Position numbers and translations under genes: made by a program. 64,000 nucleotides of DNA, taken from contig NW_002060948.1 of the NCBI RefSeq assembly GCF_000150275.1, forward strand, positions 558,001 through 622,000, written 5' to 3'. This DNA comes from Trichoplax adhaerens. Taxonomy: Eukaryota; Animalia; Placozoa. Below are positions 7,701 to 52,133 of the stretch, one piece after another. Position 1 is the stretch's first letter, and each line of letters begins with the position of its first letter. A model generated the notes under the pieces. It saw only the letters and a list, made by a program, of their open reading frames with translations, was not told the DNA's origin and did no database searches.

Positions 7701-9186
7701 CTGAGACTTTACTAACAAGAATTTTATATATTTTCACGGATAAGAGTATGCCAAGTCAAGAATTAATTCGTAAAGTTCGTGAGGCTTACTATGGGAAGAA
7801 ATTAGATGTTCGTGCATTGATTCCCATCATAAATGGTCTGGAAAAGGTTAAAAGTGAATTAAGTCTGTAGCTATTGATTGATTGATTTTATGCCTAAAAA
7901 AATGAATTAAAAATGTGAAATTTTAATTTTAGAGTGAAGTCATTGGAGCTTTACCTAAGTTAATGAAGCAATCAGCGAAGGTCGTTAAAGAAGTCATTAC
8001 GCGACTTATAAATCCATTCTCAGGTAGGGCTATTTCTTTCCCGTTAAGGTATACCATCACAAACGACGATTTCCAATTTTATTGCTATAATCTTGCAATT
8101 AAGATGTAGAAGAATCTGTCGGTCCTCGGCAGACGAGTCCTTTAACTCCGTCTGAGTTGTTATTAGCCTTACATCAAATAGAGGATGATGTTAAGTCGGC
8201 TATCAAAGGTATTCTGCGGCATTGGATGTAGTTCATTTGCAATTCGTATGCATGTCAAAAAGACTAAAATTGAGCTTTATACTTTATAGCTATAGGTTTT
8301 TGTTTAAGTGAGAAAAGTACATTTACCCAAGAAGTTTTAGCTGGTGTTTTACAGCAAATGTTAGAACGTACTACTATCCCGATTTTGTTCATGAGGACGG
8401 TAAGTTGTGTCATATACAATCGTATGCAGGTATACATTTTGATCATGCAAATAATTAAATTCATCATATAATCACTTCAGGTAATACAAACTCTACAATC
8501 CTACCCGAAATTAATATCGTTTGTGATGAATGTATTATCTAGGCTGATTACAAAGCAGGTTAAATAGTAAAGCCCTTAATGATCTTCACTACCATAAAAT
8601 TAATAGACTGATATTATAATTTCTTTTTCTGCACCTAGATCTGGAAGCAAACTAAAGTTTGGCAGGGCTTTATAAAGTGTTGTCAGGCTAGCTATATGTA
8701 GTATTTAAATTTGTTATCAGTTTTATATTGTAATTATTAGCTTTTACGGATGGCATAAATTAATGTCAAGGATGTCTTCAAAAATTTTATATTTTTATAT
8801 TCAATTTGTTGCATTTGTAGATTACAACGCCACAATCATACCCGGTCTTACTACAGCTCCCAGCACATCAGTTAGAAAGTGTTTTTCAGGTACTCACTAA
8901 CTCAATTTGGGTTCTGTTGAAATATGGCGCTTTAATATTATTTTTTCCTGATTAACGTTTAGATTGCTCCGTCTTTACAACACAATCTTAGGCAACACAT
9001 TAATCTCCTAACACTAAATCAGGTTCGTAAATACTATGAAAACAGATTTGTAGTTCGTTAAATGTTGCATTAATCGAAAAATATTTCATCTTATAGAGAG
9101 CGCATATACCGCAGTCGCTCTTATTTACCATTGAAAATTACGTAGTAGAGAATGGGAAAGAAAGCCACGATAACAAAGAGACTTGA
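1762..9186 (+). CDS. SYMPK: Symplekin (3'-end processing scaffold), about 30 exons
   Basis: Spliced exons give VIELMNRAQLE..KLVYLKQ/IQELVIMKDSALLDSFLD/EMLAFQHEKSADVQKFILGFLEEAC, NLPPTLSKSQVSNLRKHLK, LDVRALIPIINGLEK, SPLTPSELLLALH, PILFMRT/VIQTLQSYPKL and IWKQTKVWQGFIKCCQ/ITTPQSY, all recognisable symplekin blocks. TGA at 9184-9186. Confidence 0.96.
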
Positions 9187-9747
9187 TAATGATATAGAAG
9201 AACTGATTTTATTTATTCTGTGATTGATGAAATCAATACATCATGAATATTCTACATTTCAAATCGAATCATAGATTATATAGTTTGCAGTACTTTCTTA
9301 TAGCAAATTGTTGTAAAGTCTTATTTGTGATGCTTTAGTAGAATATATTTAAGTTTTTCATGGAACGATGTAACTCTAGGATAAGTTATGAATGCAAATT
9401 CCTGAAGAACGTTTCTACAGAGTTCTGTGAACTTTTAACTCTTCAACGACAAATAAGCCGTAAAATTTTTTATATATTATAAGAGATATACGTACATTAC
9501 ACTCCTGTACATTACCATCCTGTAATCAAATGTTATAAACTTTCTGCCGAGTTTAAAAAGTTTGTAAGTAGGTACAAGAATAATAGTTTATGAATCATGT
9601 AATCTGTTAACATGTTTATAATAGTAGAAATTGAACACTTTATTCTATTTCAACTACCCGACAATTTAAAACATTAAATTAAAATAGTTCTTTATAAGAA
9701 TTATAGTATGCCTTTATTGTGAACCGTTTGCTTTATCGATCTGATAC

Positions 9748-12042
9748 CTAACAATGATCAACTTGATGATCTCGCTGATCATTTGAGGTAGTTTCCATAA
9801 TATCTACAGACCTGTTACCATCTAGACTTAGATGATCTATCGGTGGTGATGGCTTTACAACTTTAATTTTGTAGTACTTTACTAATATAATAATAAAAAT
9901 GACAATTAAAGTTACTAGGACTGTCATACAGGCTATAACTATTGACCAAACTGCCAACGTGGACAGTGCGGGAGTTATGGAAGTTGGAGTTGGTGTAGGA
10001 CTCGAATAGTTAGATCTTTTAGTCACCCTACTGTTGATAAATGTAATTCTTTGACCGTTAGGAAACAAGAATTGCGTCGTATTGACTGGGGGACTAGTAT
10101 TAGAACGCTTCTTTCGATTTAATCTATAATTTACGCTAGAGTCGAAATTATTATGATACAGAAACTGCATTATGTAATCCATGCGATCATGATACAGTAA
10201 AAAATTAAGTTTAGTTATAGTATCTGTTACAGCTTTTGGTAATAAACTAAGATCTAAGTTATCGCGATACCGGTTAAAGTTAATAATAACAGTATGCCAG
10301 TTAACACCAGGCCTAAGGATGATATTATGTGATGAATTGCCCGTTATAACTACAATCATTCGTTTATGATCAACATGCAAACTTTGATTTTTAAAACTGT
10401 GAAATATTGTAATCGGAAGTGTCTTATCTGTTCTAGTTTTAATTAATTTTAAATTGAAATTAATAGGATCAAAATTATGTATCCTTAACTTATCTTGTTC
10501 ATTATTAACCACTTTAATGTCGGCGTGTATAGCACTAGTGTGATTATTTATAATATGAAGAGAAAATATAGTATCTTGCTGAACAGTCATAAATCTTCCA
10601 GGTATTATAACACCTTTCGAATCAGTAGTATAGATGAAAGGGCCTTTTAATAGTATTTGATTGAATATCAAATTACCGCTTGCTGTGCCATCGATTAAAT
10701 CTTGCCCAAATGAAAAGGTTGAAAAGTGAAAGGTGTTATTTAGCCCGGTAAATATTTCACAAGCTGGGCTACTTATTATTTGCATATTTCCTTGAGCACC
10801 TAAAATTTGATTGTTCCTACTTTGACCAAAAGCGATTTTTTGGCTGTATTGATCTGTTGTAATTACTGTTTCAATAGTGGATTGATTTAAAATATCTTGA
10901 AAAGTCCAGTCATTTCCATAGTGACTTAAGATGGATCGATCTCTAACCGATGGATTAAAAAATTGAAACAGGGGTACTGGGCCGCTGATAGAAATAATGA
11001 CTTTGCTCATGCCAGCTGTAGGTATTTGATGAGATAATTTAGAGAAAGCTGTTACTTGATCTGTTATAATCCTAGCCCATGAAATCATCTTGCAAAGATC
11101 GGAAAGCGATAATAACTGATCTACGTTATGATGAAATAGAGCCTTAATAATTAGATGAATATACCCAAGTTGATCTACATTATCGATCAATAACCTGTTG
11201 TATGTATCTATAGTTAAAATGCCTGGAATATTAAGCAATTGATCAATACTTTGATTTAAACCGTAATGAAAATTATAATTTGAAAACTGATTACGTCCAT
11301 TAGGTGACAGAAACGTGTAAACAAGAGATAAACTCAGTAATTGCCCAGCCGTTATCCGTTTAAACGTTTTAAGATGCATGTGAAGTTGATTCTTGAGCCA
11401 ATAGCCTAATCTTGTTAACTGACGATAAAAATGCTTTACTGCAGATGTGGGTAACTGATTAGTTAACATCAAATTGATTATTTTGTTAGCTTGATCCATT
11501 TTTAGTGCTGTATGTCCGCAATAAATATCACGGGCAGATTGATCATCAATCCGTAGTATGGTTGAAAAATTAGCAATACCACTTAAGCTCTTCTTTGTAA
11601 TATGAGCGGATGATAAAGAATACCAAGAATTTAGGTCTAGTTGAGCATTTAAGATAATGTTAGAAGAATTCGGAGGACATGTACAGTTAACTAACGATCG
11701 CTGGCTCTTATGATTACATCGAGCGATTAATTTTTCACCAAATAATTTTTCATATAACTGATACCAAATCGTAATATAGACTTGATTTGTCATAGCATAT
11801 TTAGACTGTGGATGAATACCGCTGATGCCGGAATTGGGTATAATATGATCCAAATCAAAAGATAATCTATCAAGTTGATAGAAGTATACTTGTAATTGCT
11901 CTTGATCTTGATGTTGAATTTGAGTTAGAATAGGACACAAAACATGATTTCTATGAATAACTAACGCAGATGTTATTGTTAATTCAGTATTAACCAGAAT
12001 AAAAATGACTACAGCCCATAAAATGGTACCATAACGAGCCAT
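9748..12042 (-). CDS. Intronless orphan type-I membrane protein (764 aa) with signal peptide, degenerate RTX/T1SS-like motifs, furin site and C-terminal TM helix
   Basis: Uninterrupted 2.3-kb ORF in very AT-rich DNA. First ATG is at 12042 (the track start at 12150 is TTG), giving MARYGTILWAVVIFILV (signal-like). Also RKKRS (~10102-10116), a SSPTPTPTSITP stalk, a hydrophobic helix (~9884-9958) followed by KYYKIK, and a short tail. Confidence 0.85.
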   Translation of the reverse strand: MARYGTILWAVVIFILVNTELTITSALVIHRNHVLCPILTQIQHQDQEQLQVYFYQLDRLSFDLDHIIPNSGISGIHPQSKYAMTNQVYITIWYQLYEKLFGEKLIARCNHKSQRSLVNCTCPPNSSNIILNAQLDLNSWYSLSSAHITKKSLSGIANFSTILRIDDQSARDIYCGHTALKMDQANKIINLMLTNQLPTSAVKHFYRQLTRLGYWLKNQLHMHLKTFKRITAGQLLSLSLVYTFLSPNGRNQFSNYNFHYGLNQSIDQLLNIPGILTIDTYNRLLIDNVDQLGYIHLIIKALFHHNVDQLLSLSDLCKMISWARIITDQVTAFSKLSHQIPTAGMSKVIISISGPVPLFQFFNPSVRDRSILSHYGNDWTFQDILNQSTIETVITTDQYSQKIAFGQSRNNQILGAQGNMQIISSPACEIFTGLNNTFHFSTFSFGQDLIDGTASGNLIFNQILLKGPFIYTTDSKGVIIPGRFMTVQQDTIFSLHIINNHTSAIHADIKVVNNEQDKLRIHNFDPINFNLKLIKTRTDKTLPITIFHSFKNQSLHVDHKRMIVVITGNSSHNIILRPGVNWHTVIINFNRYRDNLDLSLLPKAVTDTITKLNFLLYHDRMDYIMQFLYHNNFDSSVNYRLNRKKRSNTSPPVNTTQFLFPNGQRITFINSRVTKRSNYSSPTPTPTSITPALSTLAVWSIVIACMTVLVTLIVIFIIILVKYYKIKVVKPSPPIDHLSLDGNRSVDIMETTSNDQRDHQVDHC

Positions 12043-14170
12043 ATTCAGGGAATTTGAACTGATTTTATAAAACGAGTTCAAAATCGTTTGAATTGAATTA
12101 CCTATGTCATGTGATTGTAGCAGCAAGTAAAGAGGTAGAAAAAGATTCAACAGTCAATAATATAACGTAAATGGTATAAAAAATCTTATAACTCGTTGAT
12201 AACTAAAAACGAAAGATTAGCTCGCTATTTAAAAAATGGAGTAAAGAAAACAGTACTGAATTCACAACCATATTGCTCCCAAGCTTGGGTAAAAAGAACG
12301 TGTCTTTCTACAGGATGGGCTAGTATCTTATTAAATAGCGTAAATAGTGATAATTTCTTATCACGTCGCTTATAATACTGAACCATATGCTTTGAATTAA
12401 GGCTAATCAATAGTTCTTTTCCTTAAATCTTATCAAATTATTTATCGATTTAGGCGGATTAACTTAATTATTTAGTGTATTTATATATAAATTTGAAGAC
12501 CTGGAGTAATTTACATATTTTTCTTACCACGAATCATATTTTCCTACCATTTCGTCGTTATTAAAGGTTATACAATTACAAAAGATGTACATACGTAAAT
12601 GTGTGACTATTATTAATACTACTGATGCCATAACTAGATATGATGACCTTCATTAATTTGAAACTAGATTTACGTTTCTTATAATAAACAACTATTAGGT
12701 CGCTAAATGTTTCTTAATTGTACACGTATATTGAATATAAATGAATCATTCATGATACAAGATTGTAAACATATTGTTTTTTCTGTTACAAGTAGATAGC
12801 ATAGTTGATATATTAATTATTCGATCGAAGTATATTTAGTACTTCTGATCTGTAAAAATAATAACCAAAAGGATTAGCTAAAGTAAGTAAAATATGAATA
12901 CTTTTTATGTTCACGGTAGAAGCTTTCTTTCGTCATAGTCCTATGCATAGATAAATGATTGCCCCATACATGTATGCGTGAGGTGCACTTCGAAATTACA
13001 AGTAAAAAGGCGTTAAAGTTCTTATAAATGTCTTTCCACATTTTCGGAAATATCGATTTTAAAAGAAGTCGATAATTAGGTGGATTAAATATATTCTTTG
13101 ATATTGTGCATAGTCAAGTTAACCGTTAGGATCAAATATTAATCTAATAAATTTATTCGATCCCGCTTTATATCTTATGTGTAATCATGCAGTAAAGTTT
13201 AAATGTCTAAATAATACGAATTGATTTATATCATTGGTCTTAGTGCAGCAAGAATGAATTTTACTAAAATTATCTTTATGTTGCACGTAGACTATCGTAA
13301 TACCGTTAGAATAATAACAGAAAAATTGAGATTGACCTTGTGTTAATTCGATTTAAGTCTACTAATATACCCAGTGTGAAAAGTATTTCTAGACTTTATA
13401 AGCGATTTTATATAAATAAGTTTAGCTAAATTATGAATAACTTAGCTTATTCTTACTTACTTTAATTAAATACACTATGAACATTGGATATTCATTGACA
13501 GAAATAGATCTTAGCCGTAACAATTTGTATAAAAGCGACATACATTAATCTATTAATAGAGCTAAATGTGTGGTCGGGTAACAGGATCATATCTTATGAT
13601 ACGTTACTTAAAATGAGATTGATAAAACTATTACCATACTAATGGTATAATGATTTGTAATCATGACAAGACTACAAGAGCACTAAAAGTAGTAAAACCT
13701 CATCCTGTCTAAATAATGTGTCATTACTATATGATGATAATAAATTAATATATGAAATAAACGGTTTTATTGTAATTAATTTCTTTGACGATATTTTCAT
13801 AAATTTCACATAAGTTAAAGTTTAAATTCGCTCGATACATAACATTACAAAGGCGAGTTAACATTTTAAAGTTAAAGTCAAAGGTGTACCAGAAAATTGA
13901 TTTAAGATAGCAAACGCTAACATCAATTTTCAAATAGCCACACAAGTCGAAAGAACATGATTATAACAGCTAATGATTTGTACTATCAAATGATACATTA
14001 AACGAAGCTTAGTAAACTTAGTAACAAAAAGTTATCTTTAACTACTGGTATGTAAGACTAAAATGACTTATTTTAGCTAATTTATAGTTTCGTACCGTTG
14101 CTTCACCAAATATGATGGCTAATAAAAGTTCATACATATGGAATAAGTATAACTGACAGTAAAGTTATTA

Positions 14171-16349
14171 TTACTGTTTTTCCTCAAACTGGGATTTATT
14201 TTTCAATAAGTAGGCGGCCGTATATTCGATAGGATTAGGTGGCCTAGATGAAATTTTAAGTATATTATTATTTACTTTAAAGGAGATATCAGCATAAATT
14301 ATTGTCCAGTATGGTTACTTTAGGTTATAGATCGCATTTCTAATTCAAGTCTTACCGTTCTTTAGCTAATGTTGATAATGCTTGCAATAAGATAGGTACC
14401 ACAGTTTGATCTAAGTAAGCTCGCGCGGGCAGGGACTGCAAATCTACTTTCTGTTTAACCGGCTTTTCAATAGCTTCTTTCTCACCAGCTACAACTCTCT
14501 GTTAACATTTTGATTCTTAGTATCGGATGGAATCATAAAAATTTTCGAGCATATTAAACAGACTTACTAAGACATTCGAACTTAATCCTAGTTCAGCATG
14601 TATCGGTTCAGTAGGAAGCTAAGGAGTAAACATTTAAGAGACTAGTTCTTAATTTTCAAATAAATAGGATTGGATAAAAGCTAGAACTACAAGCAAGATC
14701 TGCTGGCATTTTAAATTATCTTATGATAGCATGATATTTGTTGATATGCTAAAGATGACAACTGGGCTTATTTAGGGTTAATTATGTTAGGAAAGTAAAT
14801 GATGATTTACAAGATATTATCTTGCTATAGTGTTGTTGACTTCAGAAAACATTTTATAGCAATCTTACCTCAGTTCCATCATTATTTGCTGGTGTGGCTG
14901 ATAAATTCTCTATAATAATGAAATATTGAATTATCGCGTGTGAGTAGTAGTGAATTTATCCATTCTATCATGAATTATATTAGGCTAAGGTAAAAAGTTA
15001 AGATAACCCCAATACTTTCTTTGCTAGTGTAGATGATTGATTCTCCATAATGATGAAATATTGAATTATCTCTTGATGAATCGTAACAAAACCATCAATC
15101 GTATCACGAATTATGTTAGGTTAAAGTAAAAGTTTAAGACAACATCAATGCTCTCTTTGCTGGTATAGTCGATAGATTCTCCATAATGATGAAATATTAA
15201 ATTATTTCTTAACGAATTATAACAAAATCATTCATTGTATCATGAACTATGTTAGGGCAAAGTAAAAAGTCAAGACGATCCCACTACTATCCTGAAGGAG
15301 GATGAATAGAGAAGTAGTCTACTACTTCGGATAAAGTTTCATCTTGGTAACACTATACGCATACTATAAAGCGTAAAGAAATAACTAGTCATCCATTCTA
15401 TCATGAAATATACTAGATTAAGGTAAAAGTCAGGGCGAGCCATGCAAAAAGATACCATCATTGGCGTTTACGTAGAGCGGATAGAAATTACAAATGATCG
15501 AATATATGATGAAACATATTGGACTAAGGTAAAAAGTTAGGACGATTCATGCGGAAATACTATCAATAGCATGTATGTAAAGCCACAGAAATAGATCATT
15601 GATATAGAGTGAAATATACGAGACTAGGTAAATACTTTACTATCATTGGGGGTATATGAACAGAGTGATGATCCATTGCGTCCACTAGAGGTTTCATTTT
15701 GAGAGCAGTATACAGTATATTGTCAATGGGAGAGAATATGTACATGATTTCTGTTGTCAATTCTAGCTTTAGTAAATCATACGTAGTAAAATATAGTATT
15801 GAGTTTAGTTGTACACTACTAGAAAAGCTATATTGTTATTTTCTACTGGTTCACAGTATGCTTGTAGCAAGGCTTTTACAGTAGCATGTCCTTCAGTAAT
15901 GCGAGTGAGTGTTCGTCCTTTTCCTGTTCAATAAGTTAACACTAACATCACTTGACTATAATAAGATATCTAGCACATCTACCTCGCTAGCTATTACTCT
16001 ATATAAAGAACTGAATTGAGTAAATAGATGAAAGGCTTGGATAACGACCATTTAAGGTAAATCATATAGCAGTGCTTAGATGAAGTCTATCAATGTTGAT
16101 TGCAGTTGATGTACAGTAGTAACCACCATTCGTACATTTTATGATCAATGAACAAGTTGGACGTGTAATCTACTAGTTCTACTTAAATGCAGCTATTTTA
16201 AAGCTATTACTATGAAATTAGATTAACCCACGATATCAAATAAGTGCATTGATCTCCTTTAATCATTAAAGGAATAACATCAACTTGTTCCAGAGCTCAA
16301 AATCCAAGCTACATTTGCTATTGTTGATATTCTTACCTGCATCCGCCAT
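14171..16349 (-). CDS. DPY30: Protein dpy-30 homolog (COMPASS/MLL subunit), 5 coding exons; absent from the ORF track
   Basis: Exons 16349-16337, 14909-14869, 14618-14568, 14498-14356 and 14243-14171 join in frame with GT-AG introns: [106 protein letters not shown]. Confidence 0.97.
14885..15630. repeat. Degenerate ~135-bp tandem repeat (3 full plus ~3 partial copies) in DPY30 intron 1, overlapping the exon 2 acceptor
   Basis: tttgct(g/a)gt...ttctc(t/c)ataat.atgaaatatt.aattat...tatca.gaa.tat.ttagg..aa.gtaaaa recurs at ~14885, ~15020 and ~15156. Partial copies lie near 15390, 15510 and 15610. Confidence 0.85.
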
Positions 16350-17683
16350 CTTGTTAGATCGATCACTAAGGCACGTGGACAAAATTGGCCAATGGTAGTG
16401 GTGTGGATCATGTGATAATTCATCCTTTGCCTATTGGTCCACTTGTACCTTACACGGATGTCGCTTTTGTAAGTATGTTGTAGACGATTGTATGGTACAA
16501 TACTGTACAGTATGTTACCTACAGTACTGTACACTGTACACTGTACAGTGTACAGTAGTGACGCAGATGTAGAGTCCGAGTGCAGTGGTTCAAGAGCGCT
16601 CCACTTGCTCAATTCAAAGAGGGCTGAATGTGACATTGCTTTTGCACAGTGCACTTACAGTACATCAAGAATAATTTCAGTGACTAAAACAGCGATATTG
16701 TAGTACAGTATACCGTACAGTCGGAAAAGTGTAGTGAGAACGAAAACACTTAATGCTGCTGAAATGATGTCATTTCTGCTTTCCATCTCTGGTTTCAGTT
16801 GAGAGGACTGAGAGGGAGGAGTGCTTTAGAGGCCATTTTTACAGAGTCCAGCCTAATACTCTACCCGCTACTGCATAGGGTCAACTTGGATCAGCTTCTT
16901 TATAGAGAGAGAGAGAGCTGGAAATGCAAGCGGAGAGTAATCAAAAAGAGTACGAAAGATCATCACCTAGACAAGATTTGATGTCACTTTTACTACTCAG
17001 CCGGTAGCTACAGCAATCAATCATGCTTCTAGCAGTCCCTGATATCAATCGCCATGCACAGTAAATTAATACGCTCGTGTTGGGACAATAAACGAATGCT
17101 TTATTGAACGCTAGCTAAGCATTTTAGCTACGTCAGTAGCTCCGTAATGTTGATAAGGTAACTACGCAATGTATTCAACAGGCTCGATCAGATGGGCAGT
17201 GGACGAGCATCCAGTTTACACTCAATCTGCTCCTGACACCTTCCTCGCAGACTGATCTAGGCTAAATACGAAAACCTGACAAGTCTGCTACACACTGTGC
17301 TTTCAGTCTAACACAGAACGATCAGCGACACGATTCATAAGCTGGAATAAAATCATGCCAGATCCGCTAGTGCATTAGAAGTCGGGTTGGGTTAGAAGGT
17401 TGACGACGTCATTTTAATATACTTTCCCCACATAGTAAGCAAAACGTATGACGCCCCTGGTACCTAGTACTCATCAACACTCTGAACAGGTGTAGTTGCA
17501 GCACTCAGGGACTCTTGGGCGCCAGTTTTGCTTTGAATAAAAATTGACTGTACTGTACCATTCACTCCTAAAATTCTAGGCTCCACTATGCAAGCGAAGC
17601 GCTATTGAAAAAAAAGGAGTAGTCCATGCTGCTACAGTACCAAGTCGGTCGATCATGATATCATAGTCGATTTACGGTACTAC

Positions 17684-18460
17684 ACCGTATCAAACCGTAT
17701 CGGCAGTACACAGATACAGTATAGTATAGGATTGCCATCGAATTGTACAATAGAAGACGGGGTGAGCACAGTCTTTTGCTTCTACTCCTGCGCCTGGTAC
17801 TGTAGCCATCGGAGAGTCAGTGTCCTGTCAGTCACCCCTGCCACTGGGTGACACTGGTGAGTGGATTTTTCCTTAGAAACCGTATCAAACGCTATCGATA
17901 GTACTGTACAGTGTACAGTAGAAGATGGGGTGACCACAGTCTTTTGCTTCTACTCCTGCGCCTGGTACTGTAGCCATCGGAGAGTCAGTGTCCTGTCAGT
18001 CACCCCTGCCACTGGGTGACACTGGTGAGTGGATTTTTCCTTAGAAACCGTATCAAACGCTATCGATAGTACTGTACAGTGTACAGTAGAAGACGGGGTG
18101 ACCACAGTCTTTTGCTTCTACTCCTGCGCCTGGTACTGTAGCCATCGGAGAGTCAGTGTCCTGTCAGTCACCCCTGCCACTGGGTGACACTGGTGAGAGG
18201 ATTTTTCCTTAGAAACCGTATCAAACGCTATCGATAGTATACAGATACTACTGTACAGGGTCTGTATATTGTATAGGATAGGATCGCCATCGAATTGTAC
18301 TGTACATACTGTACTGTACTGTACAGTGTACAGTAGAAGACGGGGCGACCACAGTCTTTTGCTTCTACTCCTGCGCCTGGTACTGTAGCCATCGGAGAGT
18401 CAGTGTCCTGTCAGTCACCCCTGCCACTGCCTGACTGGTGAGTGGATTTTTCCTTAGAAA
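17684..18460. repeat. Four-copy GC-rich tandem array (~128-bp near-identical core; periods 168, 168, 247) ending ~100 bp upstream of the SNX6 ATG
   Basis: The core agaaga(c/t)gggg...cacagtcttttgcttctactcctgcgcctggtactgtagccatcggagagtcagtgtcctgtcagtcacccctgccactg...ggatttttccttagaaa starts at 17752, 17920, 18088 and 18335. Confidence 0.97.
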
Positions 18461-18557
18461 GAGGCTGCAAAAAATTGTCGCTTTCACTGAAGATTCACTG
18501 AGGATTCGCCGAATTTGACTCCCATATCCACAGAAAGGAGTGCCACAACAGGCAAAA

Positions 18558-36965: not shown

Positions 36966-39260
36966 ATGATGTTAGGCTCAATTCAAATAACCAGAGAAAA
37001 TCTTACCGGCATAGATGTAGCTGAGATAGCTATATCGCTACGTAAAAATGAAGTTACTTTACTCCTTTTACGTGAATGTACTGTAACGGATGCGGATTTC
37101 GAAAAATTGGCTAATGCTCTTGCTCAATGCAAATCTATCGTACAACTAACTCTCAATATTGGAATTGTATCCAACATTCAACGTATTGCCATCCTGGCTA
37201 AAGTCCTGCAACTAAATAAATCTCTTCGACGTTTGCAGTAAGTTAATAGAGCTTATATTTAACTGATAAAAGTAGTAAATTCTATTATGGTAAACGATAA
37301 CTATTATAATGATGGACTAATACTAATAGAATATAGTAATCAGATTTACTTTATATACCATGCATGTTATATAAAGTCTTTGATGCATCAAATTAAAGTA
37401 GCTTCTTTATCGGTAGTAGTAAAGTTTTTAAATTTTTCCGGATAAGTTATATCAATGATATATTATAACATTGATAGTTAATGCTACTTGTATACTTCTT
37501 TCTTATATAAATATGAGCATGCTATTGTATCAAATATCGCATTATTGGATAGCAAACGTGCAAGTAAATTATTACTTTAAGAAAATGAATGCTAATTGCT
37601 ATTTACATAAATATTAGCCTACATGGTTCTCCTCTTGGCAATGATGGTTTAGCTTGTTTAATGCCAGGCCTACTAATACATCCAACTTTAACTGATTTTG
37701 ATGCTGGAGATTGTCAGCTTGGAGATGATGCTATTCGGGATATTGCTACGTTGATAATTGAAAAGGAAAAAAGAAAGCATCCTATAACTGTTCTTACTCT
37801 CAGCGCGAATCAAGGTACCCTAATGATTAAAAGTTTGCTTAAACAGTAACATATATACGTATGTCATCATTTTTTCCCCTTCATATCTTCTACGCTAAAT
37901 ACAGATATCTGACAGAAAATATTACATGCTTTAATATTTCTTCACATCGTTTTTGAAATTATATATTATTTTTATACACTTAGATGTTACTGCCAAAGGA
38001 TGGACTAGTCTGATTGCAGCTGTAGCAACTGCTAGATATCTCCGAAGTCTTCACATAGATTATACACGACTAGGAGATTATGGGGCCGGTATCATCGCTG
38101 TAATGTTAGCTTCTAATCGTTCATTAAGACAGCTAGACATTGAAGACACTGGCATAACAGATAATGGAGCTGAACTTATGCTACATTCACTTTATTCTTT
38201 TCCAACATCGATCTCAAACTTTATTCTGGATGAGAATGATATACATGAGGAGATACTTAGTGAGATTGATAGCTGTTTAAATCATGATCACGAAGACGAA
38301 AATATAGATGATAACGACAGTGCTGAAAATAATAAAGATGACGATGAAAGTTCTTCTGATGAACACAAGATGACATCTGTTAGCCTTAGAACGGCTGTTA
38401 GGTTTGCTCATCAAAAAAGTGAAAGTGAAAGCGATGAAGAATCGAATACAGGCCGTGGTTACAATGATACCTTCCCTAGCTTTATTCAATCAAAGCAAAT
38501 GTCTGAATCAGATGAAGATGATCGGAAAAGAATTGCATCAAAGTTACGATTAATTCAGAAAGATGGTACTCAAGAAGGAGATTATTTCGATGGAAGGAAG
38601 CCTACTTCCTCTAGAACTGAAAATAACGGGCGCAAAGATAGACATAAACACTCAAATCTGCCAAGAAAGATGTCATCAGACAGTGGTAGTAGTGGCGACA
38701 ATGATAACAGTAAGAGAGTAGAAGTTCAGGTGCACTACGATACTAAGAAAATCTCGCATCATGATCAAGATCAACCTATGTCTAAAAAACACAATGTTAA
38801 ACATCGCATTGATGATAGCGATAAAGAAAGTGATAAAAATTCAACTTCAAGGATACAAAATAATATTTTAAATGAAGAAATTGAGCATAATCAAAACTCT
38901 AACTCCAGTGATAATCAAGACCAATGGAAAGAAAGTGTTTCTACCGACAAGTCGAATTCTCGTAAACATGGCATTAATCAAGAAGTACAAAGCAGCGATG
39001 ATAATGAAGAGAATGACCATCATGAACGTGACGTAAAAGATAATGATAAAGTAGATAAAACAAATATTCAGTACGAAAGTGACGATAGTAGTAGTAGTAG
39101 TAGTAGAAGGAATAAGGCTGATGATAGGAAAAATGAGGTAGCAAGAAGTCGGAACGTGGTGAAAGGAGTAGAAATTAATAGCGATGAAGATGATGATGCC
39201 GATAATGATATAGTGCAAAGTAGTGTTAAATCTAAAGCTACTAAGGAAGTAGTAAACTAA
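36966..39260 (+). CDS. LRRC73: Leucine-rich repeat protein 73 with long acidic low-complexity tail, 3 coding exons
   Basis: MMLGSIQITRENLTG.., LTLNIGIVS, LHGSPLG..GL..L.P.L..HP.L..FDAGDCQLGDDAI, LTLSAN, VTAKGW and LDIEDTGITD match LRRC73 colinearly. Confidence 0.92.
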
Positions 39261-49203: not shown

Positions 49204-50190
49204 TTATTGGATTTTACTATTGCAATTATTGGTGGGTGATGGAGTAAAGTATGATCCCTGAATACAAATAAGTTCTTTATCACCAACTAGAAGTTGAAGA
49301 AATTTCACAACAGTAGATTTAGCAACCCAATGGTATTGATCAACTAGAATTAGATTACGATAAATGTCTTTCAAATGGACACATTCACGATATTGGCATA
49401 AATCGTCAACAATCTCGTTGAGTTGACGATATAAATTGGTATTATCAATAAGTTGATAGCAACATTTTAGGTTATTTTCGAATTTATTCTGGCAATAGAT
49501 CCATCCATTAAAATACATTTGCTTGATTGATTCCATTAATAGATTGGATATGTTATTAGTATTACTTGAAGGGAATTCAAGGAATAAATTTTGCTGAAAT
49601 TGAGAATCATGAAGAAGATTTTGAGCTGTGAATGTGTGCTGATGGCTATTTTGTAAGTAGGATTTTATATTTTTTGCAATGTTGTAATAAAGGCACGTGG
49701 TGGTCTTCTGCTGCTTAGCACTGGTAAGATCCAAGTACGGGTATGCTGGTGGTTTGCTAGGGTTGAATTGATCCTTGGCGCTCTGAGCTCGCTTTTTTCG
49801 ACAAGGTATTAAAATTTCTTGGTGATATTCTAAGCTTAAGGTCCAGTGGAGTATTTCTACCATTGGAAAATTTGTCTTGTCGATCATTTGTACGATTAAT
49901 ATTTCGATCTTGCCAGAATAAAGGAGTTGGGCCTGACCAGTTATTTGTACAAGTGCTCCAAGAGGAGCTGTTATAAAGTTCTTTTTTTTCCATTGTTTAC
50001 ATGTAATTCGATCACTGCCATCGTCAACATCGTAGGCAATGAATCTTTTTCGTGTATCAACTCTAGCTATATCACCAACGATAGTAACCTCTTTTTTATT
50101 GAAATAACCATTTCCTTGTAGCATAGTGATTAAGACATGAGGTCGAATGTTGTCAATCAACGAAAGATCGATCGTATTCTTGCAAGACAT
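49204..50190 (-). CDS. STN1: CST complex subunit STN1-like (OB fold plus probable winged-helix C-terminus), intronless
   Basis: KEVTIVGDI..F.AYDVDDGSDRITCKQWKK..LGALVQITG..EILHW is an STN1/RPA2-type OB fold. The length (~328 aa) and C-terminus fit STN1 better than RPA2. First ATG is at 50190. Confidence 0.68.
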   Translation of the reverse strand: MSCKNTIDLSLIDNIRPHVLITMLQGNGYFNKKEVTIVGDIARVDTRKRFIAYDVDDGSDRITCKQWKKKNFITAPLGALVQITGQAQLLYSGKIEILIVQMIDKTNFPMVEILHWTLSLEYHQEILIPCRKKRAQSAKDQFNPSKPPAYPYLDLTSAKQQKTTTCLYYNIAKNIKSYLQNSHQHTFTAQNLLHDSQFQQNLFLEFPSSNTNNISNLLMESIKQMYFNGWIYCQNKFENNLKCCYQLIDNTNLYRQLNEIVDDLCQYRECVHLKDIYRNLILVDQYHWVAKSTVVKFLQLLVGDKELICIQGSYFTPSPTNNCNSKIQ

Positions 50191-52133
50191 GATCACCTTG
50201 TGTATCCTACTTTAGAGAACTGAGATATAATCAAGCTTTCAAAATGTTGCTTTCGAGTAGCAATTGAAAGAGCTACATTCTAGAAGGAATTAAAGGCAAT
50301 CTAGTTCATTCATTTTGCAGTTTGTATGTAGAAAGAACTTGCAAGCCTCTACAAGCCGAGCTGCGCCATGCCCCAAGATTGATTCCTTATCAATGTTCCG
50401 AAGGTTGATCTATTCGTACAGATTTCTTGATCATCGCTTGTTTTACGAAGCCATTTGAATATATTATTTCGATGTTGGAGTTTCCATTTGTTGAAGGGGT
50501 TACATATACACGTTTAATTTGAAGCTTGTATAACACTTATGGTAAATGTTAGAAGGTAAAATTGGCCGCAACTGCCATGTTTACCTCCAACTAGTAGTGC
50601 AAGGACTTTATATTACAGTGCAATGTATAACAGCGATGACCTTGTTCCTGGTAATCGCTTTCTTACTGTCCAGAGTCATGTTTGGGAATGTACACTATGT
50701 GCTGGCGGTATTTACGATAGACCACGACGTTGCTGTTCAACCTGAGTTGGAAGATGCTCCTATAGAGTACAAGTACCGAAACATAAGCTGTGATAGCATA
50801 ATAATAACTGCTCGCATCGCGATTGTCAAGAATTACACCGTGGTATGTTCCAAGTGTCCCTTTTCAATATTGTATAGTGAAGAGTAAATATTTCCTATCT
50901 TCCATACGATAGACTCTATCGTAGGCTATGTTTTAAGTACTTATCATACCGTACGAGGATAGCAGCTTTTAATTAAGCACCAATAATTAATTTAAATAAG
51001 AAAAATGAATGGCTACGGTGTTTGTAGTAGTATCTTTATTTATTTGGTTCGTGTACAGCATACTGTCGGCCAAAATATTCATTTTTTAGTCCCTATCTTT
51101 TAATCTATATCTCATAATCTTTATTATGATATGAAATTTGTTTGTGATGGACGATAATGTGGTAATACCTTGAAATGTTGATTGCTATTTGCGAGCGAAC
51201 CTTTATATCAGGACTTCAGGAGGGATGAATGTTGATAGTTTACTCTATTACTTTTATGCAAGGCAGTCGATAGAAAATTGATGTGCTATCCTCTCTACCA
51301 GTCTAAACTGATCGATCGAACTATAATTTCGATCATAATGAGAGAACGATTATCATCAACGTCATTATTTAAGACAAACACGCAATTTCCTATACTGAAT
51401 GTAGGAATTGCGGAAGAAATTTTACTGTATGCTGATAGCCGTATGCGAGTATCGTATAGAATGATCTACAGTATGTCATATAGTACTCACTGGTGGATTC
51501 ATAGAAGCTTAAGAATAAGCTTTGAAACTTGTCTTGGTGCAGTCTACAGTACAGAGTGTGATTTCTTAGTTATAGCACCATACACAATGACGATCGGAAG
51601 GATATCTATTCGAAATCGATCTGTTCCTCAACAGAAAAGATATCCATTCTAATTATATTCATGCTACGGAGTAGTTTCAACAGTCCTGTGGCTCATTTAT
51701 AACCAGCATATCACTAACAAGTTTAACCTATGTGCTTCTGTAGTTCTTAGAATATACTATCCAATTCAAAGAATTCAATTCATTCGCTAAGACTTTTAAC
51801 GATAGGGTATACCTAACTGATTTACTCCTTCCTTTCGATACATTATTTTTCCAAGTATTGACTGAATCTCTTTGAAAATTGGGATAATGTATCCTTAGAA
51901 AGACGAAGATCTGAAGATGACTAGGCTATTGCAAGGACAGTTTAAGAAAGAATTCTCCTTCCCCGTTCAAAAAATTGCCTTCTAGAGTGAAAAAATGGCG
52001 ATTCTTCTGCAGTAATGCCTGCCAGGTCGTTGTTGCAGGTGTGCTTCACAATACTTTCTGTTCGTGACAAGGTAGGGTCAGGTACGTACAGTACGTACAG
52101 TACCGCCGGATTTCCAGCCGTGAGTACAGTACG

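What the first reader, a model, noticed from the sequence alone, without database searches (positions are those of the whole stretch)
9748..12042. Orphan animal membrane protein built on a degenerate bacterial RTX/T1SS-like scaffold: candidate domesticated horizontal transfer
Seen: a single-exon 764-aa ORF between two intron-rich housekeeping genes, with host-like base composition, a signal peptide, a stalk and a TM helix. The ectodomain contains, in order, GNDWTFQDILNQ (~10883-10918), IAFGQSRNNQILGAQGNMQII, IFTGLNNTFHFSTFSFGQDLIDG (~10687-10755), VITGNSSHNIILRPGVNWHTVIINFNRYRDNLDLSLL (~10241-10350) and TQFLFPNGQRITF (~10039-10079). Known: bacterial RTX/haemolysin-type Ca-binding proteins have GGxGxDxLx nonapeptides followed by DTFxF..FGxDxIxDF, DTIxDFxxGxDxLDLSxL and IExFxFADGxxWT motifs. 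Inference: an RTX-like beta-roll gene was acquired from a bacterium, lost most Ca-binding Asp/Gly residues, and was rerouted to the animal secretory pathway as a surface adhesin, defence or digestive protein. No intact nonapeptide remains, so the match is by eye only.
Basis: partly seen in the sequence, partly recalled or inferred. Interest (0 to 1): 0.85.

Follow-up and report, generated by a model that had tools for sequence, protein, structure and literature searches.

The report
Placozoan orphan membrane glycoprotein, faint RTX-like block
This is a real, transcribed, intron-less gene found only in placozoans; it encodes a single-pass surface glycoprotein with a conserved furin-type cleavage site, and one short stretch (about 65 of 764 residues) weakly but reproducibly resembles bacterial RTX calcium-binding repeats, which is not enough to show a bacterial origin.

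Summary
Window 9748-12042 (-) is an uninterrupted 764-aa ORF between Symplekin and a Dpy-30-domain gene. Its base composition is host-like. It has a signal peptide, a Ser/Thr/Pro stalk, one TM helix and a short tail. It is single-copy and transcribed, and it is under purifying selection (dN/dS 0.25 against a 54%-identical orthologue).

Searches of 5.8 billion and 1.84 billion proteins found only placozoan relatives. No Pfam, NCBIfam or PDB sequence match exists, and AlphaFold failed (pLDDT 31-34), so the fold test could not be run.

The RTX idea is only partly supported:
- No nonapeptide, no calcium-binding Asp, and no hit of the RTX, HCBP or T1SS models.
- Residues ~403-467 do align to bacterial "RTX repeats plus cap" peptides (hhalign score 31, P 9e-4, probability 22%). 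None of 195 shuffles exceeded 24.3.
- A reverse HMMER search of 401 bacterial genomes put two genuine RTX proteins on top (best E 2.3e-4 per genome).
- The other claimed motifs and the remaining ~90% of the protein show no bacterial similarity.

Best reading: a lineage-restricted type I membrane pro-glycoprotein, cut by a furin-like convertase near the membrane, with a beta-solenoid-like binding segment. I put bacterial descent of that segment at about 25%.

The parts
9748..12042 (-). Complete single-exon CDS, 764 codons plus the stop at 9748-9750
   Evidence: ORF list. 100% match to a catalogued protein and single copy in its own genome. RNA contigs cross it without splice joints.
11959..12042 (-). 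Signal peptide (aa 1 to about 28)
   Evidence: Hydropathy peak at aa 5-30. The same M-A-R-x-G plus hydrophobic start is present in the orthologue when read from L001:1943.
10963..11952 (-). N-terminal half of the ectodomain (aa 31-360). Predicted mainly helical, with the four conserved ectodomain Cys (C109, C120, C122, C175)
   Evidence: Secondary structure comes from two low-confidence AF2 runs. No family match.
10633..10959 (-). Segment with 9-residue hydrophobic periodicity (aa 362-470). It is the most conserved part of the protein (63% identity)
   Evidence: Lag-9 autocorrelation is 0.44, the highest of lags 3-30. It was reached in 1 of 200 shuffles at lag 9 and in 9 of 200 at any lag.
10642..10836 (-). 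RTX-like block (aa 403-467): about four degenerate nonapeptides, then an N-N-T-F-H-F ... F-G-Q-D-L-I-D-G cap-like motif. No calcium-binding Asp
   Evidence: hhalign against 32 bacterial RTX-plus-cap peptides gives score 31, P 9e-4, probability 22%. Shuffle nulls reach at most 21.7 and 24.3. Natural controls reach at most 14.9. The reverse HMMER top hits are RTX proteins.
10123..10632 (-). Beta-rich C-terminal half of the ectodomain (aa 471-640).
   Evidence: Strand-rich in both AF2 runs, at low confidence. The control search of aa 476-586 found only noise. The second-motif alignment has P 0.24.
10105..10116 (-). Furin-type proprotein-convertase site R-K-K-R (aa 643-646). The orthologue has R-I-R-R at the same column
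   Evidence: It is the only R-x-K/R-R in the protein and is conserved. The genome carries convertase P-domain genes. Cleavage itself is inferred.
9961..10104 (-). Juxtamembrane stalk (aa 647-694) with three sequons and a Ser/Thr/Pro-rich run
   Evidence: Read directly from the sequence. It is the least conserved region (41%).
9877..9960 (-). Transmembrane helix (aa 695-722)
   Evidence: Hydropathy up to 3.3 over 19 residues. It is the only part of the AF2 model with pLDDT above 50.
9751..9876 (-). Cytoplasmic tail (aa 723-764). It has a conserved K-Y-[YF]-K-I-K start and a conserved Q-R-D-H-Q ... C end
   Evidence: Alignment of the orthologues.
12043..12401 (-). Transcribed 5' leader. It includes a 21-nt block (12381-12401) that is identical in the distant orthologue's upstream region
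   Evidence: An RNA-Seq contig spans 11950-12401 and depth is zero from 12528 onward. The block is unique in the window.

Best explanation
The gene encodes a placozoan-restricted type I membrane pro-glycoprotein.

Shown:
- It is an intact, single-copy, intron-less host gene.
- It is transcribed.
- It is conserved over its whole length between distant placozoans, under purifying selection.
- It has an N-terminal signal peptide, an ectodomain of about 660 aa with 12 sequons, one conserved furin-type site about 50 residues before a single TM helix, and a 42-aa conserved tail.

Inferred mechanism:
- The protein enters the ER and is N-glycosylated (and probably O-glycosylated on the stalk).
- A furin-like convertase cuts it after R646 in the late secretory pathway.
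- The roughly 620-aa ectodomain is then either shed or held non-covalently on a short membrane stub.
- It acts outside the cell as a binding or adhesive surface, for example towards substrate, prey or microbes, or other cells.
- The most conserved part (aa ~362-470) probably forms a short calcium-independent beta-solenoid, with strands recurring every 9 residues, that resembles an RTX beta-roll with its cap.

Where that segment came from is unresolved: a bacterial RTX gene, convergence, or chance resemblance within an orphan that arose or diverged inside Placozoa. I lean against a demonstrated transfer.
For: - Gene reality: ORF; single copy; 99%-identical protein in Trichoplax sp. H2 and a 54%-identical orthologue on a low-GC contig.
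- Selection: dN/dS 0.25 at dS 1.3.
- Host context: Symplekin and Dpy-30 neighbours; host-like GC3.
- Transcription: a bona fide RNA-Seq run shows spliced Symplekin joints, unspliced contigs over the ORF (10128-10741, 11193-12401), and no depth at 12528-13700.
- Topology, sequons and furin site; their conservation; convertase genes in the genome.
- Restriction to placozoans: only two 90% clusters among 5.8e9 proteins and one further representative among 1.84e9 by full phmmer; nothing in bacterial, metagenome or viral contig scans.
- Periodic, RTX-like segment: lag-9 periodicity; hhalign score 31 against nulls of at most 24.3; specificity controls; reverse search.
Against: - No structure could be predicted (pLDDT 34 and 31), so the solenoid and the domain layout are inferred from sequence patterns only.
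- Cleavage, glycosylation, surface location and any binding function are untested.
- RNA evidence comes from assembled contigs, which give neither strand nor level.
- The short-term variants among strains are mostly non-synonymous (9 of 12). That could mean relaxed constraint rather than a strongly selected function.
- Language-model features point instead to viral envelope-like proteins.
Confidence: 0.6

Rival explanations
1. The gene, or at least its aa ~380-470 segment, descends from a bacterial RTX / type I secretion substrate gene acquired by an ancestral placozoan. It then lost the calcium-binding Asp/Gly residues, gained a signal peptide, TM anchor and furin site, and was domesticated as a surface protein.
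For: - Profile-profile alignment of aa 403-467 to RTX repeats plus cap, with the sub-motifs in the bacterial order: score 31, P 9e-4, probability 22%.
- 0 of 195 composition-preserving shuffles reach 25. 8,902 aa of natural sequence from the same window reach at most 14.9.
- The score rises from 23 to 31 when the orthologue is added.
- A Beta_helix control profile gives only 13.9.
- In an unbiased search of 401 bacterial genomes, the two top hits are in-frame RTX proteins (E 2.3e-4 and 5.4e-3). One aligns on its Pfam PF00353 stretch, at 39% identity over 38 aa.
- A control segment of the same protein finds only junk.
- An intron-less gene stands out next to neighbours that show several ~80-nt introns in RNA contigs and, from background knowledge, in a genome regarded as intron-rich.
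- RTX repeats are essentially bacterial (background knowledge; review PMC3034196).
Against: - PF00353, PF06594 and TIGR03661 do not hit the ORF. The bacterial profile finds nothing in the genome by HMMER.
- The best reverse E-value is about 0.09 after correcting for 401 genomes.
- 22% HH probability is in the range where false positives dominate, and the family was chosen after seeing the sequence.
- No calcium-binding Asp at any repeat position 6.
- Only about 8% of the protein is involved. The full-length profile finds nothing else bacterial.
- The aa 565-601 and 655-667 motifs are not significant.
- No phylogeny is possible, and base composition is fully host-like.
Confidence: 0.25
2. A captured viral envelope gene. 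On this reading the gene is a domesticated envelope or fusion glycoprotein of a virus or retroelement (Baculovirus F / errantivirus env-like), kept as a host surface protein.
For: - Language-model feature search lists Baculo_F, Gypsy-env and paramyxovirus F clusters for the whole protein (0.85-0.89; 176-180 of 256 features shared), and Baculo_F again for aa 365-660 (0.84-0.87).
- The generic architecture fits: intron-less, signal peptide, heavily glycosylated ectodomain, furin site, C-terminal TM, short tail, fast evolution, lineage restriction.
Against: - All feature scores are under 0.9, which the tool rates as a lead only. AT-rich composition may drive them.
- No Pfam match to Baculo_F, Gypsy or Fusion_gly, and no Baculo_F anywhere in the genome.
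- The furin site lies next to the membrane, and a polar sequence follows it rather than a fusion peptide.
- The heptad (lag-7) signal is the weakest of all lags (0.08).
- No flanking LTRs or direct repeats of 40 nt or more.
- No relatives in viral contigs.
Confidence: 0.08
3. Pure orphan. The gene arose de novo, or diverged beyond recognition, within the placozoan lineage. The RTX likeness is a chance or convergent by-product of short beta strands separated by Gly/Asn turns.
For: - No homologue outside placozoans in any search.
- Fast evolution: 54% identity between placozoans.
- The match is short, lacks the functional Asp residues, and sits in the twilight zone (22% probability).
- The hypothesis was formed after looking at the sequence.
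Against: - The match exceeds all 195 shuffles and all natural controls.
- It is specific to RTX rather than to a generic beta-helix profile.
- The order repeat, repeat, N-x-T-F-x-F, then G-x-D-x-I-x-D mirrors the bacterial arrangement.
- A 764-aa multi-region glycoprotein is large for a de novo gene.
Confidence: 0.45

Closest known systems
Bacterial RTX nonapeptide block with its C-terminal cap (Pfam PF00353 HemolysinCabind; serralysin C-terminal domain PF08548)
   Same: Residues 403-467 align in register with two to three nonapeptides, then the 'N-D-T-F-V-F' strand and the 'G-x-D-x-I-x-D-F' turn. The segment has 9-residue hydrophobic spacing. The bacterial peptides used for comparison carry PF00353 and PF08548.
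   Different: No GGxGxD unit and no Asp at the calcium positions. No Pfam or NCBIfam hit. The block is only about four units long. It is embedded in a eukaryotic type I membrane protein with a signal peptide instead of a C-terminal T1SS signal. Fold unverified.
Membrane-anchored precursors released by a juxtamembrane furin site (for example zona pellucida-module proteins such as uromodulin and ZP3). This comparison rests on background knowledge.
   Same: The layout is signal peptide, large glycosylated ectodomain, R-x-K/R-R site a few dozen residues before a C-terminal TM helix, and a short tail. This suggests secretion or assembly after cleavage.
   Different: No ZP module. There are only four conserved ectodomain Cys, where a ZP module has 8-10, and there is no Pfam hit. 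This is an analogy of processing logic only.
Viral class I envelope/fusion glycoproteins and their domesticated copies (Baculovirus F PF12259, errantivirus env)
   Same: Intron-less, type I topology, N-glycans, furin site, rapid evolution. They are the nearest clusters by language-model features.
   Different: No sequence-model match. The furin site is in the wrong place and is not followed by a fusion peptide. No heptad repeats and no retroelement context.

Membership tests
RTX / haemolysin-type calcium-binding repeat proteins (PF00353) | Tandem nonapeptides matching GGxGxDxUx | tested here: not met
   Regular-expression scans for GGxGxD, GxGx[DN] and related patterns give zero matches. PF00353 does not hit the ORF by hmmscan at E<=10 or by a six-frame genome search.
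RTX / haemolysin-type calcium-binding repeat proteins (PF00353) | Asp (or Asn/Gly carbonyl) ligands at the calcium-binding turn positions | tested here: not met
   In the nonapeptide layout of aa 406-459, position 6 reads N, M, E, F, Q, G. In the hhalign register, the Asp columns face M420 and N436.
RTX / haemolysin-type calcium-binding repeat proteins (PF00353) | Significant profile similarity to the RTX block plus cap | tested here: inconclusive
   hhalign gives probability 22%, P 9e-4, score 31, against shuffle maxima of 21.7 and 24.3. The reverse HMMER best E is 2.3e-4 per genome over 401 genomes.
RTX / haemolysin-type calcium-binding repeat proteins (PF00353) | Parallel beta-roll fold | not testable with these tools
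   Both AlphaFold2 runs failed (mean pLDDT 34 and 31). The ESM Atlas model has pLDDT 0.29. No fold search was run on such models.
Type I secretion substrates (TIGR03661 T1SS_VCA0849; PF06594 HCBP_related) | C-terminal T1SS target domain or HCBP-related motif | tested here: not met
   TIGR03661 has no match in the genome at E<=10. The only weak PF06594 match lies on another contig. The protein ends in a TM helix and cytoplasmic tail.
Baculovirus F / class I viral fusion glycoproteins (PF12259) | Match to the family model | tested here: not met
   No PF12259, PF07253 or PF00523 hit at E<=10. No Baculo_F in the genome. Only language-model feature similarity of 0.84-0.89.
Baculovirus F / class I viral fusion glycoproteins (PF12259) | Furin site immediately followed by a hydrophobic fusion peptide, plus heptad repeats | tested here: not met
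   The sequence after R646 is polar (S-N-T-S-P-P...). The lag-7 hydrophobic autocorrelation maximum is 0.08, the lowest of all lags.
Zona pellucida-module precursors | ZP module with 8-10 conserved Cys | tested here: not met
   Only C109, C120, C122 and C175 are conserved in the ectodomain. No Pfam hit.
Type I single-pass membrane glycoprotein (generic class) | N-terminal signal peptide, one TM helix near the C-terminus, luminal sequons | tested here: met
   Hydropathy and motif scan. Features are conserved in the orthologue, with 7 shared sequons.

The most novel reading that the evidence does not exclude
An ancestral placozoan took up a piece of a bacterial RTX gene, perhaps from an intracellular symbiont. 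The beta-roll block with its cap survives as the most conserved core of a placozoan-only surface glycoprotein. It now folds without calcium, and it is routed through the animal secretory pathway and released by furin. This would be a domesticated bacterial adhesin/toxin scaffold in one of the earliest-branching animal lineages.
Probability: 0.25. Interest if true: 0.7.

Novelty: new variant of a known kind. Interest (0 to 1): 0.45.

Why it matters
Placozoans are among the simplest animals. Their lineage-specific surface proteins are candidates for how they adhere, feed on biofilms and deal with microbes and symbionts.

This gene is a clean example of a conserved, expressed, taxonomically restricted membrane glycoprotein that current structure predictors and sequence databases cannot place.

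If the RTX-like block proves to be a true beta-roll of bacterial descent, it would be a rare case of an RTX scaffold domesticated by an animal, and one that has dispensed with calcium. That would interest people working on horizontal transfer into early animals and on beta-roll protein engineering.

If it is not, the case is still useful. It shows how far a motif-by-eye match can be pushed, and where it stops.

Tried and rejected
Searches and predictions that found nothing usable:
- Pfam, NCBIfam, PHROGs and PDB sequence searches, with the single sequence and with a profile: nothing.
- AlphaFold2 on the single sequence and on the three-sequence alignment: unusable. I therefore ran no fold search, because matches of a pLDDT-31 model are meaningless.
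- More orthologues to deepen the alignment: none in the 5.8e9 or 1.84e9 protein sets, or in bacterial, JGI metagenome or viral contigs.
- Paralogues in the genome: none.
- LTRs or target-site duplications around the ORF: none of 40 nt or more.

RTX tests that failed or showed nothing:
- RTX-family HMMs on the genome: no hit on the ORF.
- The bacterial RTX-plus-cap profile by HMMER on the genome: no hit.
- Full-length profile against 401 bacterial genomes: no further region with bacterial similarity.

Other:
- Two parallelised shuffle runs timed out. I repeated them serially.
- Literature searches for the H2 locus tag, and for Trichoplax with RTX or horizontal transfer: nothing about this gene.
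They were identified exon by exon through family searches only.
Full report
**1. What is in the sequence**

The ORF listing returns a single long open frame at 9748-12150 on the minus strand.

A motif and hydropathy scan shows:
- a hydrophobic N-terminus (aa 5-30);
- one strong TM helix (aa ~695-722);
- a single R-x-K/R-R site (R-K-K-R, aa 643-646);
- 13 N-x-S/T sequons, 12 of them before the TM helix;
- nine Cys;
- no GGxGxD-type nonapeptide.

Base composition matches the host. The ORF has GC 0.33 and GC3 0.26, the window has GC 0.325, and another long host ORF in the window has GC3 0.25.

**2. Whose gene it is, and its neighbours**

The exact protein is catalogued on a 5.98-Mb contig. Its 90% cluster contains RDD44838.1, 'hypothetical protein TrispH2_002442' of Trichoplax sp. 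H2, which differs at five residues. The window is therefore placozoan, close to Trichoplax adhaerens.

- Symplekin_C exons lie at window 8280-8695 on the plus strand.
- Dpy-30 exons lie at 14195-14429 on the minus strand.

I identified both exon by exon and did not assemble spliced models.

The ORF is single-copy in its genome. No direct repeats of 40 nt or more flank it.

**3. Relatives**

Only one other protein turned up: P0002, at 54% identity, on a 4.9-kb ENA metagenome contig of 30.5% GC (L001). It was the sole hit in two searches:
- a word-seeded search of 5.8 billion proteins;
- an exhaustive phmmer pass over 1.84 billion cluster representatives.

I take L001 to be a distant placozoan. 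This is an inference from its composition and from blocks of conserved non-coding DNA upstream.

The gene call on L001 starts too late. Read from L001:1943, the orthologue has the same M-A-R-x-G plus hydrophobic signal peptide.

Scans of bacterial and archaeal genomes, JGI metagenomes and viral contigs with the alignment found nothing.

Conservation runs through the whole protein (41-63% by region). It includes the furin site (R-I-R-R in the orthologue), seven sequons, four ectodomain Cys and both ends of the cytoplasmic tail.

Nei-Gojobori dN/dS is 0.25 at dS 1.3, so this is a constrained coding gene that evolves fast. Among 12 variants seen in other strains' assemblies, 9 are non-synonymous. 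The number is too small to interpret.

**4. Expression**

One run that is recorded as RNA-Seq (X5) carries GT..AG spliced joints across six Symplekin introns. This shows that it holds processed RNA.

The same run has unspliced contigs over the ORF and its leader (10128-10741, 11193-11526, 11548-11953, 11950-12401). It has no depth from 12528 to 13700.

That pattern fits an intron-less transcript starting near 12400. Contigs cannot give strand, ends or level.

Runs X1 and X2 look like DNA, because coverage is even and continuous. One X2 contig spans 7800-13700, which independently confirms the arrangement Symplekin, ORF, upstream region.

**5. Known families and fold**

- Pfam, NCBIfam and PHROGs models give nothing credible.
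- PDB sequences give nothing, with the single sequence or with a profile.
- AlphaFold2 failed twice, with mean pLDDT 34 and 31. Only the TM helix rose above 50. The ESM Atlas model is equally poor.

Both low-confidence runs agree on one point only. The N-terminal half (to about aa 340) is helix-rich and the C-terminal half is strand-rich.

**6. Testing the RTX idea**

The direct family tests are negative:
- PF00353, PF06594 and TIGR03661 do not hit the ORF.
- No nonapeptide is intact, and no Asp occupies the calcium-binding positions.

I then built an independent comparison set. I fetched bacterial loci through a degenerate DNA pattern for G-N-D-T-F-V-F. From these I kept 32 peptides that also carry the G-x-D-x-I-x-D-F turn. 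Five of them, scanned against Pfam, all carry PF00353, and three of those also carry the serralysin C-terminal domain PF08548.

The score is 31, P 9e-4, probability 22%.

Controls:
- 105 global column shuffles: mean 12.0, maximum 21.7.
- 90 shuffles that preserve local composition: mean 12.2, maximum 24.3.
- The reversed sequence: 13.0.
- 85 natural stop-free stretches from the same window (8,902 aa): maximum 14.9.
- A Beta_helix (PF13229) alignment built from 20 bacterial hits: 13.9.
- The protein on its own scores 23.3, and adding the orthologue raises this to 31.2.

I also ran the search in reverse. A profile of aa 365-475 was searched by HMMER in six frames over 401 bacterial genomes.
- The two best hits were in-frame segments of long RTX proteins, at E 2.3e-4 and 5.4e-3 per genome. 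All weaker hits were noise.
- The best one aligns at 39% identity over 38 residues, on the stretch that Pfam calls HemolysinCabind.
- A control profile of aa 476-586 over the same genomes gave only stop-ridden junk, with a best E of 8.9e-3.
- The full-length profile found no other region with bacterial similarity.
- The bacterial profile run by HMMER on the placozoan genome found nothing.

Finally, hydrophobic residues recur every nine positions around aa 362-470. This is the strongest periodicity of any lag from 3 to 30. It was reached by 1 of 200 shuffles at lag 9 and by 9 of 200 at any lag. The segment is also the best conserved in the protein (63%).

**7. Weighing the RTX evidence**

The resemblance of aa ~403-467 to an RTX block with its cap is real as a pattern. 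It is specific and it is carried by conserved residues.

It remains in the twilight zone, for these reasons:
- The HH probability is 22%.
- The best reverse E-value is about 0.09 after correcting for 401 genomes.
- The family was chosen after looking at the sequence.
- The region covers only about 8% of the protein.
- The functional Asp residues are missing.

The other claimed matches are not significant. The aa 565-601 motif has P 0.24. The aa 655-667 motif was compared with HCBP_related, which does not hit the ORF.

I put descent of this block from a bacterial RTX gene at about 25%. Chance or convergent likeness within a placozoan orphan is about 45%.

**8. A second lead**

The language-model feature search listed Baculovirus F, Gypsy-env and paramyxovirus F clusters, for the whole protein and for aa 365-660 (scores 0.84-0.89).

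The generic architecture fits a captured envelope gene. The defining features do not:
- There is no model match.
- The furin site is beside the membrane and is followed by polar sequence.
- There is no heptad signal.
- There is no retroelement context and there are no viral relatives.

I keep this at about 8%.

**9. How it most likely works**

What is shown: the topology, the conserved convertase site, the sequons, and transcription. The genome also encodes convertase P domains.

What is inferred:
- ER entry and glycosylation.
- Cleavage after R646 in the late secretory pathway.
- Release, or non-covalent retention, of a roughly 620-aa ectodomain.
- An extracellular binding or adhesive role, centred on the conserved periodic beta segment.

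The processing logic resembles membrane-anchored precursors with a juxtamembrane furin site, such as zona pellucida-module proteins. The ZP module itself is absent.

**10. Verdict**

The gene is a placozoan-only, expressed, intron-less type I membrane pro-glycoprotein of unknown fold, with one RTX-like block of uncertain origin.

Noticed in passing
window 12381-12401 (also 12362-12463) and L001 1515-1622: A 21-nt block about 340 nt upstream of the ATG is identical between the Trichoplax gene and the 54%-identical orthologue. Shorter conserved blocks lie nearby. The RNA-Seq contig ends exactly at 12401. This is possibly a core promoter or leader element.
   Followed up: partly
L001 1943-2005: The public gene call for the orthologue (P0002) starts at an internal Met. 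The open frame continues 21 codons upstream to an M-A-R-N-G start with a signal peptide that matches Trichoplax.
   Followed up: yes
window 14882-15542 and 17665-18494: Two tandem-repeat arrays lie beyond the Dpy-30 gene: units of about 136 nt (3-5 copies, 73-83% identity) and 168 nt (4 copies, 76-98% identity).
   Followed up: no
window 37935-39257 (+) and 49207-50211 (-): Two other long stop-free stretches in the window. One has a weak leucine-rich-repeat hit (LRR_6, E 3.6e-5). The other has an OB-fold tRNA_anti-codon domain (E 2.4e-6). They were used here only as natural controls.
   Followed up: partly
window 9748-12042, variant positions listed: Of 12 single-base differences seen in other strains' assemblies within the ORF, 9 change the amino acid. 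Two of these (A604T, S681N) are among the five differences from Trichoplax sp. H2. This could be relaxed or diversifying selection at short range.
   Followed up: partly
window 9161-9663: An RNA contig covers the 600-nt gap between the convergent Symplekin and ORF 3' ends. AATAAA/ATTAAA signals lie 30 and 104 nt after the ORF stop. The two 3' UTRs may abut or overlap.
   Followed up: no
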